A DNA stretch of 48,714 bases, counting the filler, from Bipalium vagum (lineage: Eukaryota): the NCBI GenBank assembly GCA_037834085.1. It is 2 parts of 2 records of this genome, joined end to end, with 100 filler letters (N's around TTAATTAATTAA, not from the genome) between each part and the next. Parts side by side here need not be neighbours in the genome. Positions count along the whole stretch, not along the records: positions 25,411 to 48,714 come from JBBMKC010210817.1; 1 more part is not named here. One strand, 5' to 3'. Each line of letters opens with the position of its first letter. Position 1 is the first letter of the stretch. A program made the position numbers and the translations under genes. The notes beneath the pieces are model-generated. The model was not told the DNA's origin, searched no databases, and worked only from the letters and a program-made list of their open reading frames with translations. Shown one piece after another: positions 28,636 through 33,988 of the stretch.

Positions 28636-31600
28636 ATGAAGATTGTCTTTATTTGCGCGATATTACTTAATATACATGTTCTTTTGAGTTTTAGTAAGTT
28701 GTAATTTGTTTAATTCATTTTAAGTCTTTTCAGAAAATCCGAAAATTAAAGAGGTTTTAATTATAAGCCTACACCATGTTTCTGATGGTGACACAATTAC
28801 AGTATTGGCTCAAAACGGGACGAAATTAAGAATTCGAATGGCATTCATAGATGCCCCAGAGATAAATCAACCTTTTGGAGAAGAAGCTAAAATAAGATTA
28901 ATTTCTATACTTAAAAACAGTACATTCTTCAAAGTTTATCAATACTCAGAAGATTCATACAACCGAATTCTAGGAATGATAAGCACACTAGACGGAACGG
29001 ATGTCAACAAGTAATTTATCGATTAATTAAATTAATTTTTATTTTTCATTTTTTTTTGCAATATTCATTTTTTTAATTATTTATTTTTATGTGATGTTTT
29101 AATGATTAAAATTACAAAAAAATTAACATTAATCAAATAAAAGTAAACTTATTTTGAAGATAAAATTTAATTATTAAATCAAAAATGGTGACATGTAAAT
29201 TTAATTTTATATTCATAAGAATTTCTTCCTTGAAAAATATTTATAGAAAGCAAATTTATAAAAATATTTTTTTAACGAAATAAAAAAAATCATGTTAAAA
29301 AGGAAAAATAGAAAAATAAAATCTACATGTAGAAAATTTGATCTGTCACGTCTATATGAATTAGTTTGCTGATAATATGATATTGAAATAAAAATATATT
29401 AAATACAAATGTAATATCTCGTTTCTAAACATAAATATGATTTAAGGGCTTATTTATTTATTTTATAGACAGAAAAAATGAGCATTTATGAAGGTTTAAC
29501 AATATCTTCTTGTCTAAAGACGGTTTGCGTTGATTTAATAACGAATGGAACGTCAGAGAAAAAATTTTATTTTAATTTTATATTCTATTTTAGTGTAAGG
29601 TCAATAAAGTACACACGTATTGTTCTGATGTTGTATGATAATGTAATGGAGAAACTTAAAATAATATTTGGTTCAAATAGCAATTGACTTGACCAGTGCT
29701 AAAGGTCTCTGATAATATATATACAAAAAATAAACAAAACGATTAATTCTATGTAGTAAGAACAAAACCGTTTAATTCATTTCAATTCTTTATATATTTT
29801 TAATGACAAAAATCTCACTTTTACGAATAAATTACAGTTTCTACAAACTTTCAATGACTTCTGATAATAAGGAATCTCGAAAGATGATAAGATTTATTGT
29901 CCTTAAATACACATTGAAAAAGGACATGAAATCCCTACTTACCTTTAAAATTTTCGGTACAATGTACAAAAAAAATATTATTAATCAAAATATGTACAAT
30001 ATCAGAAGATATCTGAATCATGTTAATAGCTAGAAGTCAGTTATAGCCACAAAAAAGCAAAGGAATTTTGATCTATTTTCTTTATTACACAATAGCCTTT
30101 TACCTCAGCATTCATTTATTGTTTTTCATCCTCATAAATACATCAATGAAGTCATTTTAATGATGAACCACGGGGCTTGTGAGAACTAAGATATCATCCA
30201 GAAATATCATATTTCTTTTGTTCTTGTTTATACCTTTTGTCATTATTTCCTAAAACGAACTTTTTGCAGCTGCAATATCATTATATCATATATATATATA
30301 TCATATTATATTAAAATATCATATCTACACTTGGCATAAGACATTTTTGTCTTTTCATCATCACATTTAGTCTTCTAAAGTCAAGAGAAATCCTAATGCA
30401 TTTCTTGTCCTTATTCGTACACGTAGAGGCATTTTAAATGGTGAATTAAATTTTCTAAAAACATTGTTATCATAGAGATTCTTTATAATTTCGTTGATCT
30501 TTCCTTCTAAATTCATTTGCTGTCAATTCATTCATAGTCAAGTGCGTACACCCTATGTCAAGTTTATTCACAATAAGCGGCATTCATTTATCTTAATGAT
30601 CTTCTTTAACTTGGTATTCTCTTTAAGATTTTTAAAGCTCTTTTCAATCGATCCCCTTTTGAAAACAATATTTCAAAGTGTCCTTCTGTTACACAACGTA
30701 TCACAACAATCACCCATCTCTCAAAATTCATTTTTGGTTGCCTAATCAAACTGTATCCAAAATCTCCTCGAATCAATTTTGAGAAAACACTATCTACCGA
30801 TACAAAGCTTACCAACTTTCCCCCTTGTAAATTCATGTTAACACACTATCTACTATTTTATATAATTTTTCGAAAAAAATTATCCAAGCTATCTAACTTG
30901 GCAATAGTTTAGCAATTTATCTAGATATTCCATCTTGCTTTTTGGTTTAGAGAAACCCAGCCATCACCCGTGCCTTTTCTAATAAATCAATATATAGTGG
31001 GGAATATATCAATGTTTCTCTTCTTAAAACTGGTGTTTCCTTTACGTTGAAATATCTTACACATGTCAACAGCGTGCAAAACCTTTCCGAATCCAATAGT
31101 GGTGCTACATTAATATCTATTGGATATGAATCCATAATAGTAAGTTGTTTTAAATAACTTATTAAATGATAAAAAAATTGCACAACATTTAAAAAAAATT
31201 ATTCAAACCATGGGATTGTAAAGGATCAAAGGACTTCTTTCAATTCAAATAGAGCTTGATTTCCAAATAGAGATAAATAAAAAATAAATTACGTTATTGG
31301 ATTTTTTTAAAAATATATTTTTGATTGATCATTATGTAATTGTTAATAGATTTTTGATTTTTATATAGAATTGAGTTTATCATTTTAAAATTTCATGATT
31401 TTTAATTTCACAACCAAAGTTAATTTTTTGTTTTTTTAGTTTTTTTTTTTAGGATTATAGATAAATCACTGTAAATAAATATACTGAACATTATTAGTTT
31501 ACTAATTTTATTCTTTGAATTTATTAAATTAAATTCTATAATAAATTAATAATAAGTAAATACAATTTACTATGCTTAGTTTAATAATGTATAATACATT

Positions 31601-33988
31601 TTTTAAAAAAAAAGGTTAAAATAAATATCGATATGAGGCTGCAAATTGCGGAAATGTTCCAGAGAGGGGGAAATTAGCAGGGCTTTCAATATTAGTTGGA
31701 CAGGTGTCAGAAAGGTCTGTGTGAAGTTCCAAAAGACTGGGTTAGTATCAGATAAAAAGATATCTGGTCGACCAAAAAATTATCAGAAAGGGAGACACAT
31801 TTGCTAACTCTCAATTCTAATAAGAACCCATTTCCAAGAAATCCAAAACGCTCATTAGTGTTTTGTGGTGCAAGACCTACAACAATTATATTAATAATAG
31901 CGAATATTGGAAAATTATTAGTTTTTTTCATGAGTGTCGCATTAAATCCAGCTCATCTTATAACCGGTATGTGAGAAGACCACATGGGCATATGTTTGAT
32001 CCAAAATATACCATTAAAAATGTCCGATACATCAACAAATCCATTTTGATATGGAAAGCAATAAATGTGACGGCAGCAGAATACTCATTTGATGTTCAAT
32101 TCAATTTGATTCAACTGCTTATCGTATTGGAAGAAGGACTACAGGATATGTACGTAAACGACTCCTTTTTCATACAAGATGGTGTACTATGTCATATGTG
32201 TCGATCTACAATGTCTTATCTGGAACAGAAAATATTTTCTCTTATTAGTGACCAGCCGCTGCAGTCACCTGACATGAAAATCATCAAAGATATGTGGTCC
32301 ATTCTGAAGACAACTGTTTCTAAATTCAATATAATGTCATCAGAAGATTTATGGAATTTCCCTTAAGTTATGGAACGATATTCCAACAAAAATCGTCATT
32401 AATTTGTAATTTGATTCAATTCCTCAGCGATTAAAAGCAGTTGTGAATGCTAAAGGATATCATTGAACATATTAAATGTTATTTATAAATTATTTCATGA
32501 AATATAATCATTTGCCTTGGAATATGATTAATTAAGTCACAACATTCTGGCTTAATTTTGAAGTGTCCCAAAGTTTAATTTCCGACTTATTTATTAAATT
32601 CGTCAAATGATATTGATTGCCAAGTCGTTATATATTTTTATAAAAAAATTTTTATCTTAAAATGAAAAATACATTCAGGTACTCTATTTTTAAAATATTG
32701 ACTTTATTATCTTTTTGTAATGTGTCACTAACCTATTTCCAACTCTGTAATTGCTGTATTTAAAATTCTTATGATATGCATTGTAGAATTTTATAATTTA
32801 AAAATATTTTAACAATTTTATTAATAAATAATAAAACTTAATTAGTTAATAACTTTAAATATATAAAAAATCTGAATGCATTTTTTTTATTTATATTATT
32901 ATAGGTTTTAATGGGCTCACTAAATTTGTTTAGATATATCGGATTTATGATAATATTAAATACATTTTTAAAAACTTAATGTAGTGATATTAATATATCT
33001 TTATGTACATTAGAAATGTACAAAATAATAATAATAATAAAGTACTTTTTCTGAGAAAATATAAGTGTTTAGTTGATCTTTATTTAAAATTGATCATTGT
33101 ATCTATCTCTTTCCGTCTTTACTATCTTTAATAATTTTAGCTCATTAAATATAAAAAAATAAAATTCAGTTAATAATTTAATATTCGTTTTTATTTTACT
33201 TTTTAAAAAGTTATTCAAAATCAAAATTTAGATCATGTGTTTTTAGAGATTCGATAAAAAATTAATACTTTATTGAATAGAACGGTTAAAAATAGTACTT
33301 GATGTAATAGTCAGGTCAAAAATGATACTTTATACATTATTTTAATTAAAAAAATTAGGACTATAAATTTATTAAGTAAAAATTGATTGATAATTCCAAG
33401 ATGAATATTTTGTCTTCACATCCATTCATATATACATGAGTATATGTATTTGAATTGAAGACATCACCATAAATTTCATTCATTACCACAATCTTAGTCT
33501 CCAGTTTCCCCCAAAATTGACTCAATTCATTGGATGTCAGCTCCAGTATACCTGTCAACAAAGTTCAACTTGTGGTTGATAGTTCGATGAACATTATTTG
33601 TGAACTGGAGTAGGATTTTCACTCATCATTCATTATAACGGATTCATATGCAACGATGCCCATTATAAGTAATCATTTCGGTCAAAAAAGCATAATATAG
33701 AAATTTTAATATTAATCATTGTTTATATTTATCAAATTTCACATATATTTGTTTATCATATTGTTCAGATTGATGGTGAAAGAAGGTTTAGCGTGGTGTT
33801 TTTACAAAAGATGTCCCAAAGAATACAAGGAATTATTAAACATAGCTAAATCTAAAAAATTAGGATTATGGAAAATTGAAAATCCACTGGCTCCCTGGAA
33901 ATATAGAAAATCAGAAATGAAAAGACATAAAGTCCTGAAGAAACATCATAAAGATAAGCAAAATCATAAAAAAGACGAATTGTTATAA
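28636..33988 (+). CDS. Secreted staphylococcal-nuclease (SNase/thermonuclease) family endonuclease, 184 aa, 3 exons
   Basis: Exons 28636-28693, 28734-29010 and 33769-33988 (GT-AG, phases 1 and 2 consistent, 555 nt). Protein: MKIVFICAILLNIHVLLSF (signal-like), VSDGDTI, RIRMAFIDAPE..QPFG, DSYNRILG, VNKLMVKEGLAW, AKSKKLGLW...P..PWKYR, ending KKDELL. Confidence 0.9.
29800..31140 (-). mobile_element. Decayed Ty3/Gypsy pol fragment inside SNase intron 2
   Basis: Minus strand has SPF.MP...KDKKCIRISLDFRRLNVMMKRQKCLMPSVD (RT N-terminal block, ~30325-30450) and FLDDILV (YxDD motif, ~30185-30205); interrupted by stops and a TA-rich insert. Confidence 0.75.
31620..32590 (+). mobile_element. Degenerate Tc1-like transposon inside SNase intron 2
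   Basis: EISRAFNIS...FQKTG..SGRPKKLSER in the N-terminal part; ORF 31863-32366 has FIQDGVLCH and QPLQSPDMKIIKDMWSILK; a TIR-like GTGTCCCAAAGTTTAATTTCCGACT lies near 32563-32587. Confidence 0.8.
33370..33695 (-). mobile_element. Merlin (IS1595/ISXO2-like) remnant inside SNase intron 2
   Basis: Minus strand reads HRTINHKLNFVDRYTGADIQ*IES.WGKLETKI. The terminal TTTTTTGACCGAAATGA matches the start of the 3615 copy. Confidence 0.7.

What the first reader, a model, noticed from the sequence alone, without database searches (positions are those of the whole stretch)
28636..33988. Standalone, intron-containing, secreted thermonuclease: candidate horizontally acquired DNase
Seen: three exons separated by a 40-bp and a ~4.76-kb intron join into a 184-aa single-domain SNase with a hydrophobic N-terminal leader on its own exon and two N-glycosylation sequons (NGT, NST). 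Residues equivalent to the staphylococcal nuclease catalytic/Ca2+ set (D21, R35, D40, E43, R87) are all present in DGDT, IRM, IDAPE and DSYNR. Established: animals normally have SNase domains in the multidomain Tudor-SN/SND1. Single-domain forms with IDAPE..QPFG and GLW...P..PW.YR are typical of bacteria and plasmids, fungal LCL3 and plant CAN nucleases. Inference: a domesticated foreign gene among animal-type genes (RUSC-like, Tctex1, BBS7). Possible roles are extracellular DNA digestion or destruction of host extracellular traps if the host is a parasite. The ORF track shows it only as two unlinked fragments.
Basis: partly seen in the sequence, partly recalled or inferred. Interest (0 to 1): 0.8.

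Follow-up and report, generated by a model that had tools for sequence, protein, structure and literature searches.

The report
Intron-bearing bacterial-type thermonuclease gene in a eukaryote
A three-exon nuclear gene in a very AT-rich, transposon-rich eukaryotic genome encodes an intact 184-residue nuclease whose relatives, apart from one ortholog of unnamed origin, were bacterial wherever they could be identified and are common on conjugative plasmids, so it is a sound but still unproven candidate for a gene captured from bacteria.

Summary
Exons 28636-28693, 28734-29010 and 33769-33988 (+ strand), split by a 40-bp and a 4758-bp GT-AG intron, give a 184-codon frame. Exon 2 and exon 3 hit consecutive parts of Pfam SNase (profile positions 1-65 and 68-106). 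The equivalents of staphylococcal nuclease D21, R35, D40, E43 and R87 are all present.

One protein in 1.84 billion representatives, P0001 (170 aa, organism not given), is about 58% identical. It is colinear across both splice junctions without a gap, which validates the gene model.

All other relatives are at most 52% identical. Every named or context-checked one is bacterial, and the family is very common on conjugative plasmids. The gene is host-like in composition (GC3 28%), single-copy in the piece, and linked to Tctex-family and BBS7 genes.

Horizontal acquisition is therefore the best reading, but it is not proven:
- No fungal LCL3, plant CAN or Tudor-SN comparators could be fetched.
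- The tree does not resolve a donor.
- The host's phylum could not be determined.
- No RNA run exists for this sequence.

Secretion is inferred from a 19-residue hydrophobic leader. The parasite and extracellular-trap roles are speculation. Verdict: a new member of a known kind, of moderate interest.

The parts
28636..28693 (+). Exon 1: ATG plus a 19-codon hydrophobic leader and the first base of a split Lys codon
   Evidence: Sequence. Mean Kyte-Doolittle hydropathy is 2.21 with one charged residue. P0001 has an equivalent 21-residue leader ending in the same F-K-x-P-K motif.
28694..28733 (+). Intron 1, 40 bp, GTAAGT...TTTTCAG, phase 1
   Evidence: Sequence. Without this splice no Met precedes the catalytic DGDT motif. 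Read-through meets a TAA within 4 codons. BBS7 introns in the same piece are about 42 and 55 bp.
28734..29010 (+). Exon 2: N-terminal two thirds of the SNase domain with D39, R54, D59, E62, Y95 and R97
   Evidence: Pfam SNase E 1.8e-7, profile 1-65. Alignment to S. aureus nuclease. 59% identical to P0001 residues 23-111.
29011..33768 (+). Intron 2, 4758 bp, GTAATT...TTGTTCAG, phase 2, GC 25.5%
   Evidence: Sequence. The junction is confirmed by gap-free continuity with P0001 residues 111-114 and with Pfam profile positions 65 and 68.
31646..32366 (+). Degenerate Tc1/mariner-type transposon relic that inflates intron 2
   Evidence: Weak HTH_28 hit (E 0.0077) on 31646-31807. The 167-aa ORF 31863-32366 carries Tc1-like motifs by eye. 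Summed contig depth in X1 is 5-12 times the background over 31255-32830. No terminal inverted repeats were found.
33769..33988 (+). Exon 3: C-terminal third of the SNase domain, the Cys122/Cys127 pair, a basic Lys/His-rich tail and the TAA stop
   Evidence: Pfam SNase E 1.1e-4, profile 68-106. 57% identical to P0001 residues 114-166. Translation.
34089..34094 (+). AATAAA about 100 nt after the stop: a possible poly(A) signal
   Evidence: Sequence only. This is weak evidence, because such hexamers are common in a 25%-GC genome.

Best explanation
This is an intact nuclear gene for a compact thermonuclease of the staphylococcal-nuclease fold. The enzyme would bind Ca2+ through D39, D59 and the backbone of A60. 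It would use E62 as the general base and R54 and R97 to hold and polarise the phosphate, cutting DNA and RNA to 3'-phosphate products as S. aureus nuclease does.

A 19-residue hydrophobic leader on its own exon directs the protein into the secretory pathway. The mature enzyme then acts outside the cytosol, either secreted or lumenal. A Cys pair found only in this protein and its one ortholog probably forms a disulfide there.

The gene most likely entered an ancestor shared with the organism of P0001 by horizontal transfer from a bacterium or one of its mobile elements. It then gained two spliceosomal introns (one later swollen by a Tc1-type transposon), and its base composition drifted to that of the host.

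Shown: the gene structure, domain, catalytic residues, one colinear ortholog, prokaryotic nearest relatives and host-like composition. Inferred: activity, export, the disulfide, and the direction and source of the transfer.
For: Gene model and domain.

Ortholog P0001:
- It is colinear across both junctions.
- Its AlphaFold model has mean pLDDT 92.5. The model matches staphylococcal nuclease with TM 0.80 by target and rmsd 2.5 A over 129 columns.

Conservation in an alignment with 202 relatives:
- The catalytic D, D, R, D, E and R columns are invariant except for one Gln at the last Arg column, and P0001 keeps them all; the window's own set was read from the alignment.
- The Cys pair is present in none of the relatives. 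It is seen only in P0001 (in that alignment) and in the window.

Nearest relatives are prokaryotic:
- Named hits are Campylobacter troglodytis, Aliarcobacter butzleri, Pseudogulbenkiania, Leeia, Vogesella, Gulbenkiania and Snowella.
- Five relatives had their surrounding genes inspected. Four are dense prokaryotic arrays with mobile-element genes such as SSB, RecT, Dam methylase or replication proteins; the fifth (P0032) is a dense prokaryotic array without them.
- At least 5000 plasmid records match, mostly conjugative. One example lies next to type IV secretion genes on an IncX1 plasmid.
- The nearest ESM Atlas clusters are 84-100% bacterial, apart from one archaeal cluster.

P0001 is probably not bacterial. 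Peptide-pattern scans, using patterns that P0001 matches exactly, found nothing above 48% full-length identity in 185,579 prokaryotic species genomes. They found nothing above 47% in 241 million metagenome records, and nothing in viral contigs.

The window and P0001 are sisters in the tree (ultrafast bootstrap 96, SH-aLRT 93).

Integration in the host genome:
- CDS GC is 31% and GC3 28%, against 22-26% in the introns and 32% in the Tctex gene.
- There is one copy in the piece.
- The X1 DNA contigs are identical to the window.

Export: 162 of 203 family members (P0001 included) carry an N-terminal hydrophobic stretch.
Against: - No eukaryotic single-domain SNases (fungal LCL3, plant CAN, protist forms) could be brought into the tree, so vertical descent from an old eukaryotic family is not excluded.
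- The tree is a poorly resolved star. The only sister is a long-branched cyanobacterial MAG at 67/79 support, so no donor can be named.
- The organism of P0001 and the phylum of the host are unknown.
- There is no RNA evidence for either splice junction.
- The leader has 17 uncharged residues and no clean -3/-1 cleavage motif, so it could be a type II signal anchor rather than a cleaved signal peptide.
- The NGT sequon column also carries N-x-S/T in 9 of 202 relatives, so it is not evidence of glycosylation.
- The middle of intron 2 is not bridged by the independent contigs.
Confidence: 0.55

Rival explanations
1. Vertical inheritance. The gene belongs to an old eukaryotic family of single-domain SNases, the same stock as fungal LCL3 and plant CAN1/CAN2, that most animals lost and that survives in this lineage. 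Its likeness to bacterial enzymes would only reflect the slow evolution of the catalytic core.
For: - Single-domain SNases do exist in eukaryotes (PMC3505149, read; LCL3 from established knowledge).
- The gene has two introns, fully host-like composition and a long stem branch of 1.3 changes per column. All of these fit great age.
- The tree gives no supported bacterial sister.
- No eukaryotic comparators were in any tree.
Against: - Among 51 word-sharing relatives of P0001 in a collection that includes nr and UniRef, every named one is bacterial and none is fungal or plant, although LCL3-sized proteins were within the length window.
- Only one protein above 52% identity exists in 1.84 billion representatives.
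- The architecture (leader, one domain, short basic tail, 170-184 aa) is that of the plasmid enzymes, which align with P0001 over 92-96% of its length.
- The product starts with M-K, so the N-myristoylation that defines CAN proteins (PMC3505149) is impossible.
Confidence: 0.2
2. Same enzyme and origin, but not secreted. The uncleaved leader acts as a signal anchor, and the nuclease works as a membrane-bound enzyme facing an organelle lumen or the cell surface, as the membrane-bound eukaryotic SNases do. In that case it would serve nucleic-acid turnover or programmed cell death.
For: - The hydrophobic stretch is 17 residues long, at the upper end for signal peptides, and has no small residue at -3 before the likely end of the leader.
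- In the P0001 model residues 4-19 form a single helix followed by a linker.
- Plant CAN nucleases are plasma-membrane bound (PMC3505149).
Against: - The bacterial relatives are exported enzymes with similar leaders.
- The clade-specific Cys pair fits either location.
- No signal-peptide predictor was available, so the point is open rather than contradicted.
Confidence: 0.2
3. A silent relic. A transferred or duplicated gene that is no longer transcribed or needed and has simply not yet decayed.
For: - No RNA run holds the stretch.
- Intron 2 has been invaded by a transposon and the gene lies in a transposon-rich region.
- Only one relative is known.
Against: - All three exons are open, although stop codons are expected at 8.6% of codons here. 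The chance of open frames this long is about 2.5e-4 and 1.4e-3.
- Both introns keep canonical GT-AG ends.
- After about 42% divergence from P0001, every catalytic residue and the Cys pair are retained.
Confidence: 0.08
4. An artefact: bacterial contamination or a chimeric assembly that joined foreign DNA to eukaryotic DNA.
For: - The window's contig is short (23.3 kb).
- The middle of intron 2 is not bridged by the Logan contigs of run X1.
Against: - The coding sequence is interrupted by two GT-AG introns, one of them 40 bp like the neighbouring BBS7 introns.
- GC3 is 28%, against 41-68% GC for the bacterial loci that carry relatives.
- A 4352-nt X1 contig carries exon 1, exon 2 and host-type flanks with no differences.
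- Tctex-family and BBS7 genes lie on the same piece.
Confidence: 0.02

Closest known systems
Thermonuclease family proteins of bacterial conjugative plasmids and other mobile elements (for example WP_139505593.1 on an IncX1 E. coli plasmid)
   Same: - The compact architecture is the same: an N-terminal hydrophobic leader, one SNase domain and a short basic tail after the GLW...P..PW.YR motif.
- Identity is 39% over 92-96% of the ortholog P0001 and up to 49% over exon 2.
- All catalytic residues are shared.
   Different: - This gene is nuclear, has two spliceosomal introns and is 31% GC.
- It carries a Cys pair (C122, C127) that none of 202 relatives has.
- Identity stays at or below 52%, and no donor lineage is resolved.
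Staphylococcus aureus thermonuclease (micrococcal nuclease, Nuc)
   Same: - The fold is the same: the P0001 model against PDB 3pmf gives TM 0.80 by target and rmsd 2.5 A.
- The Ca2+ and catalytic set is the same: D21, R35, D40, E43, R87 and also Y85.
- It is likewise an exported enzyme with a leader.
   Different: - Sequence identity in the structural alignment is only 22-25%.
- T41 is replaced by Ala. Only the backbone of that residue binds Ca2+ (established knowledge).
- The scores for the NCBIfam equivalogs NucI and EcnA are far below their cut-offs.
Fungal LCL3 and plant CAN1/CAN2 single-domain SNases
   Same: They are eukaryotic, intron-containing genes with one catalytically competent SNase domain and a hydrophobic or lipid membrane-targeting N-terminus (PMC3505149; LCL3 from established knowledge).
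   Different: - Those proteins are longer and membrane-bound. CAN proteins are N-myristoylated and palmitoylated and have an extra region before the domain.
- This product starts with M-K and is only 184 aa.
- None of them appeared among the named relatives.
- Kinship was not tested by a tree.
Tudor-SN (SND1)
   Same: It contains SNase-fold domains and is the usual carrier of this fold in animals (established knowledge; PMC3505149).
   Different: Tudor-SN has four tandem SN domains plus a Tudor domain. Here there is one domain, no Tudor hit in Pfam, a full catalytic set and a secretory-type leader.

Membership tests
SNase / thermonuclease superfamily (Pfam PF00565) | Sequence match to the SNase profile above the curated gathering score | tested here: met
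   Exon 2 scores 32 bits and exon 3 scores 23.1 bits against a cut-off of 21. They cover profile positions 1-65 and 68-106.
SNase / thermonuclease superfamily (Pfam PF00565) | Ca2+-binding and catalytic residues equivalent to D21, R35, D40, E43 and R87 | tested here: met
   The alignment to S. aureus nuclease places D39, R54, D59, E62 and R97 of the product (numbering) on those residues. The same columns are invariant, or in one case nearly invariant, in 202 relatives.
SNase / thermonuclease superfamily (Pfam PF00565) | OB-fold beta-barrel with three helices | tested here: met
   This was tested on the 58%-identical ortholog P0001 only. Its model has pLDDT 92.5 and a Foldseek TM of 0.80 to staphylococcal nuclease. 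The window's own joined protein was not folded because it has no reference.
SNase / thermonuclease superfamily (Pfam PF00565) | Ca2+-dependent hydrolysis of DNA and RNA to 3'-phosphates | not testable with these tools
   This needs recombinant protein.
NCBIfam equivalogs EcnA (NF047969) and NucI (NF047694) | Score above the curated equivalog cut-off | tested here: not met
   P0001 scores 46.4 against a cut-off of 180, and 27.8 against 250. Exon 2 scores 26.9 and 25.9. The gene is related to these families but is not a member of either.
Horizontally acquired gene in a eukaryote | Physically part of the host genome (introns, host composition, host neighbours) | tested here: met
   There are two GT-AG introns. 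GC3 is 28%. Tctex-family and BBS7 genes lie on the same piece. The X1 DNA contigs are identical to the window.
Horizontally acquired gene in a eukaryote | Nearest relatives outside its own small clade are prokaryotic | tested here: met
   All named hits and all five relatives whose gene neighbourhood was inspected are prokaryotic. Most hits, however, are unnamed metagenomic proteins.
Horizontally acquired gene in a eukaryote | Phylogeny nests it inside a prokaryotic clade, apart from eukaryotic homologs | tested here: inconclusive
   The trees place the pair in an unresolved star of bacterial and unnamed metagenomic sequences. No eukaryotic SNases were available, and the sister has only 67/79 support.
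Horizontally acquired gene in a eukaryote | Patchy distribution: absent from related taxa | not testable with these tools
   The host taxon is unknown. Only one ortholog was found, but intron-split genes in unannotated genomes would be missed.
Horizontally acquired gene in a eukaryote | Expressed and spliced | not testable with these tools
   No RNA run holds the stretch. The only holder is a DNA run kept as contigs.
Plant CAN nucleases | N-terminal myristoylation/palmitoylation motif (Gly at position 2) and an extra region before the domain | tested here: not met
   The product begins M-K-I-V, and the domain starts about 15 residues after the leader. The defining features are taken from PMC3505149.
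Fungal LCL3 | N-terminal transmembrane anchor plus sequence grouping with LCL3 proteins | not tested
   The leader could be an anchor, but no LCL3 sequence could be fetched for comparison.
Tudor-SN (SND1) | Tandem SN domains plus a Tudor domain | tested here: not met
   Pfam finds a single SNase domain, 184 aa in all and no Tudor domain.
Secreted protein | Cleavable N-terminal signal peptide | tested here: inconclusive
   The leader has hydropathy 2.21 and one charge, but no predictor was available, and its length and -3/-1 pattern are ambiguous.

The most novel reading that the evidence does not exclude
An invertebrate lineage captured a thermonuclease of the kind carried by conjugative plasmids. 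It fitted the gene with introns, kept the export leader and added a disulfide. It now uses the product as its own secreted Ca2+-dependent DNase/RNase, for example to digest nucleic acids in food or to break up bacterial biofilm DNA or host extracellular traps. This would be the first standalone bacterial-type SNase domesticated by an animal.
Probability: 0.35. Interest if true: 0.6.

Novelty: new member of a known kind. Interest (0 to 1): 0.45.

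Why it matters
Bacterial hydrolases captured by invertebrates are a known class, and single-domain SNases are known in fungi and plants. However, I found no paper that describes a standalone bacterial-type thermonuclease in an animal genome (searches gave nothing relevant).

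If the host is an animal and the gene is expressed, it would add a nuclease to the list of functional transfers. It would also be a clean case for studying intron gain and adaptation to the secretory pathway (the new Cys pair). And it would be a simple, assayable candidate for extracellular DNA digestion, since Ca2+-dependent nuclease assays are standard.

If the protein instead groups with LCL3 or CAN, it would show that this old eukaryotic nuclease family survives in more lineages than thought. That would be of smaller interest.

Tried and rejected
- RNA support could not be obtained. The listed joints have 20-24-nt sides in AT-rich repeats and are not splice junctions.
- The word-index search with exon 2 found nothing at E <= 1e-5. 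This is uninformative for proteins longer than 159 aa.
- Host identification failed:
  - Exact look-ups of three window ORFs found nothing.
  - A homolog search with the first Tctex exon found nothing.
  - Rfam gave one tRNA-like hit only.
  - The BBS7 fragment is about 40% identical to the PDB BBS7 chain 6vbu_7, which does not discriminate between lineages.
- The encoding contig of P0001 is not on record. Only a UniParc identifier without an organism is known.
- Eukaryotic comparators were sought among the multi-domain hits, on the idea that they might be Tudor-SN. Pfam shows no Tudor domain in them: they are tandem SNases or fusions with PQQ or ankyrin repeats.
- The viral route was checked: no relative was found in 2.9 million viral contigs, and only 5 phage records match, at 32-35% identity.
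- Terminal inverted repeats of the transposon in intron 2 were not found.
- The bacterial promoter/terminator scan gave no more hits than shuffled sequence.
- A 153-row mixture-model tree did not finish. It was replaced by FastTree and a 51-row careful tree.
- The joined 184-aa protein was not sent to any search or folding tool. The joined CDS was used only inside a script, to count its length, GC content and motif positions.

Full report
**The observation**

The piece is very AT-rich, 19-33% GC in 1-kb windows. On the + strand an ATG at 28636 opens a 19-codon hydrophobic leader that ends one base into a Lys codon at 28693. A 40-bp intron (28694-28733, GTAAGT...TTTTCAG) leads to exon 2 (28734-29010). 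A 4758-bp intron (29011-33768, GTAATT...TTGTTCAG) leads to exon 3 (33769-33988, stop TAA). The joined CDS is 555 nt, i.e. 184 codons plus the stop.

Pfam SNase (PF00565) hits both large exons above its gathering score. The two hits cover consecutive parts of the profile: positions 1-65 on exon 2 and 68-106 on exon 3. phmmer against the PDB aligns exon 2 with S. aureus thermonuclease. The DGDT, IRM, IDAPE and SYNR motifs fall on D21, R35, D40/E43 and R87. In the 184-aa numbering these are D39, R54, D59, E62 and R97. T41 is Ala, but in staphylococcal nuclease that residue binds Ca2+ only through its backbone (established knowledge). The sequons NGT (47-49) and NST (81-83) are present.

At this composition, open frames of 92 and 73 codons have probabilities of about 2.5e-4 and 1.4e-3.

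**Independent validation of the splice model**

A profile-free HMMER scan of 1.84 billion representative proteins with exon 2 found 3986 relatives. Only one was close: P0001, 170 aa, E 6.7e-26.

P0001 aligns with exon 2 over its residues 23-111 (59% identity, E 3e-38). It aligns with exon 3 from residue 114 (57% identity, E 2e-22). The split junction codon and the first codon of exon 3 fill residues 112-113 exactly, so there is no gap at the exon 2/3 junction.

P0001 also has a 21-residue hydrophobic leader that ends in the same F-K-x-P-K-x-K-E motif spanning the exon 1/2 junction. This supports all three exons.

P0001 is known only as UniParc UPI00060F0E5B, without an organism, and its encoding contig is not on record. 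It is probably not bacterial. Peptide-pattern scans using patterns that P0001 matches exactly found nothing better than 48% identity in one genome of each of 185,579 prokaryotic species. They found nothing better than 47% over the full exon in 241 million metagenome records, and nothing in viral contigs.

**What the protein is**

The AlphaFold model of P0001 (pLDDT 92.5) has an N-terminal helix (residues 4-19), a linker, and then a beta-barrel with helices. Foldseek matches it to staphylococcal nuclease with TM 0.80 by target and rmsd 2.5 A over 129 columns.

I aligned P0001 with 202 relatives. The catalytic Asp, Asp, Arg, Asp and Glu columns are invariant, and the last Arg column has a single Gln exception. 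The two cysteines in the AWCF..RCPKEY stretch are shared by the window and P0001 but occur together in none of the 202 relatives. A clade-specific disulfide in the secretory pathway is the simplest reading, but that is inference.

The NGT sequon is shared with P0001. However, the same column carries N-x-S/T in 9 of the 202 relatives, so it proves nothing.

The leader has mean hydropathy 2.21 and one charged residue, and 162 of 203 family members (P0001 included) have a comparable N-terminal hydrophobic stretch. Export is therefore likely. With 17 uncharged residues and no clean cleavage motif, though, a signal-anchor reading remains open, and no predictor was available.

The tail is Lys/His-rich and ends in K-K-D-E-L-L. 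This is close to, but not, a C-terminal KDEL, and it is not conserved in P0001.

**Relatives and origin**

Outside P0001, identity never exceeds 52%.
- Every named relative is bacterial: Campylobacter troglodytis, Aliarcobacter butzleri, Pseudogulbenkiania, Leeia, Snowella, and Gulbenkiania, Vogesella, Aquaspirillum and sphingomonads in the genome scan.
- Five unnamed relatives had their contigs inspected. All lie in dense prokaryotic gene arrays. Four of these arrays carry mobile-element genes: restriction-modification, SSB, RecT, a Dam-type methylase, plasmid replication proteins. The fifth, P0032, does not.
- In PLSDB, both P0001 and exon 2 match at least 5000 plasmid records. Of these, 4518 and 4286 are conjugative. 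Identity is 39% over 92-96% of P0001 and up to 49% over exon 2. One example lies beside type IV secretion genes on an IncX1 plasmid.
- Phage records are few and more distant.
- The nearest ESM Atlas clusters are bacterial, apart from one archaeal cluster.
- Scores for the NCBIfam equivalogs EcnA and NucI are far below their cut-offs, so the protein belongs to neither.

Trees of 153 rows (FastTree) and 51 rows (IQ-TREE, mixture model) put exon 2 and P0001 together (96/93 support) on a long stem. The pair sits inside a poorly resolved star of bacterial and unnamed metagenomic sequences. The only sister is a long-branched cyanobacterial MAG at 67/79 support. No donor can be named. In the first tree I left out proteins over 260 aa or under 120 aa and near-duplicate cluster members. 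The window was represented by exon 2 alone.

**The gene is part of the host genome**

- CDS GC is 31% and GC3 28%. The introns are 22-26% GC and the neighbouring Tctex-family gene is 32%. The bacterial loci that carry relatives are mostly 41-68% GC.
- tblastn finds one copy in the piece.
- BBS7 introns on the same piece are about 42 and 55 bp, so a 40-bp intron is normal here.
- Intron 2 is swollen by a degenerate Tc1-type relic whose summed contig depth in run X1 is 5-12 times the background.
- X1 is a DNA run kept as contigs. One 4352-nt contig covers 28300-31547 and another covers 32506-34175, both without a single difference. The repeat between them is not bridged.
- Contamination is therefore excluded. 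A mis-join inside intron 2 is unlikely, because the two halves are colinear parts of a single-copy gene, but it is not formally excluded.

**What remains open**

1. The host. Tctex-family and BBS7 genes occur in ciliated eukaryotes generally. Mos1- and Tc1-type mariner relics, TAA stops that fall at the conserved protein ends, and 40-55-bp introns fit an invertebrate animal but do not prove one. My attempts to place the host failed.
2. Eukaryotic comparators. No LCL3, CAN or Tudor-SN sequence could be fetched with the tools left, and the multi-domain hits are not Tudor-SN. The indirect evidence is twofold. No fungal or plant name appears among the word-sharing relatives of P0001 in a collection that includes nr and UniRef. 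And the architecture is the plasmid one, not the CAN one (PMC3505149).
3. Expression. No RNA run is on record.

**Verdict**

This is a real, intact, intron-bearing gene for a catalytically complete, bacterial/plasmid-type thermonuclease with an export-type leader. It has one ortholog elsewhere. Horizontal acquisition followed by intron gain and compositional drift is the best explanation (about 0.55 for the whole statement; about 0.85 for "real SNase gene"). Vertical descent from an old eukaryotic SNase family is the main rival (about 0.2). The proposed roles against extracellular traps are speculation.

Literature searches found no description of such a gene in animals. I rate it a new member of a known kind, of moderate interest.

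- The exons were searched one by one by reference.
- The joined protein was not sent to any search or folding tool. It was used only inside a script for counts.
- Read laying was given 5901 letters.
- No N stretch was filled.

Noticed in passing
window 39210-39916 (+): A two-exon Tctex-family dynein light chain gene of about 185 aa. Its best PDB match is the flagellar outer-arm light chain LC2 (E 1.9e-6). Its roughly 146-bp intron is mostly a (TTA)n microsatellite, and a TTGTTTCAG acceptor lies 20 nt before the ATG.
   Followed up: partly
window 45797-48100 (+): Several short exons of a BBS7 beta-propeller. Pfam PF23743 E-values are 3.4e-19, 3.1e-8 and 1.3e-13, and identity to the PDB BBS7 chain 6vbu_7 is about 40%. 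The exons are separated by introns of about 42 bp, 1.6 kb and 55 bp. The gene runs off the end of the piece.
   Followed up: partly
window 25411-27218, 34360-34611 (-), 40282-41280 (+), 41483-42030 (+): Several decayed Tc1/mariner copies. HTH_48 of Mos1 type appears twice, and there is a DDE_3 fragment with the HPPYSPD..PSD motif. The region is unusually rich in such relics for only three genes in 23 kb.
   Followed up: partly
window 37850-37921 (-): Rfam reports a tRNA (38.1 bits, E 7e-5), but ARAGORN finds no tRNA anywhere in the piece. It may be a tRNA pseudogene or a tRNA-derived repeat.
   Followed up: partly
window 34013-34200: Summed contig depth in run X1 jumps to about 1900, against a background of about 25, immediately downstream of the nuclease gene. 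This indicates a very high-copy repeat.
   Followed up: no
window 33967-33985: The nuclease ends in K-K-D-E-L-L, one residue away from a C-terminal KDEL retrieval signal. The tail is Lys/His-rich and is not conserved in P0001.
   Followed up: no
window 45505-45717: A long (AAT)n/(ATT)n tract reads as poly-Asn on one strand and poly-Ile on the other, just upstream of the first visible BBS7 exon.
   Followed up: no
P0074 and P0029 (hits): Among the relatives there are unusual fusions. One is a 950-aa protein with two SNase domains and many ankyrin repeats. Another is an 880-aa protein with three SNase domains and a PQQ-type beta-propeller.
   Followed up: no
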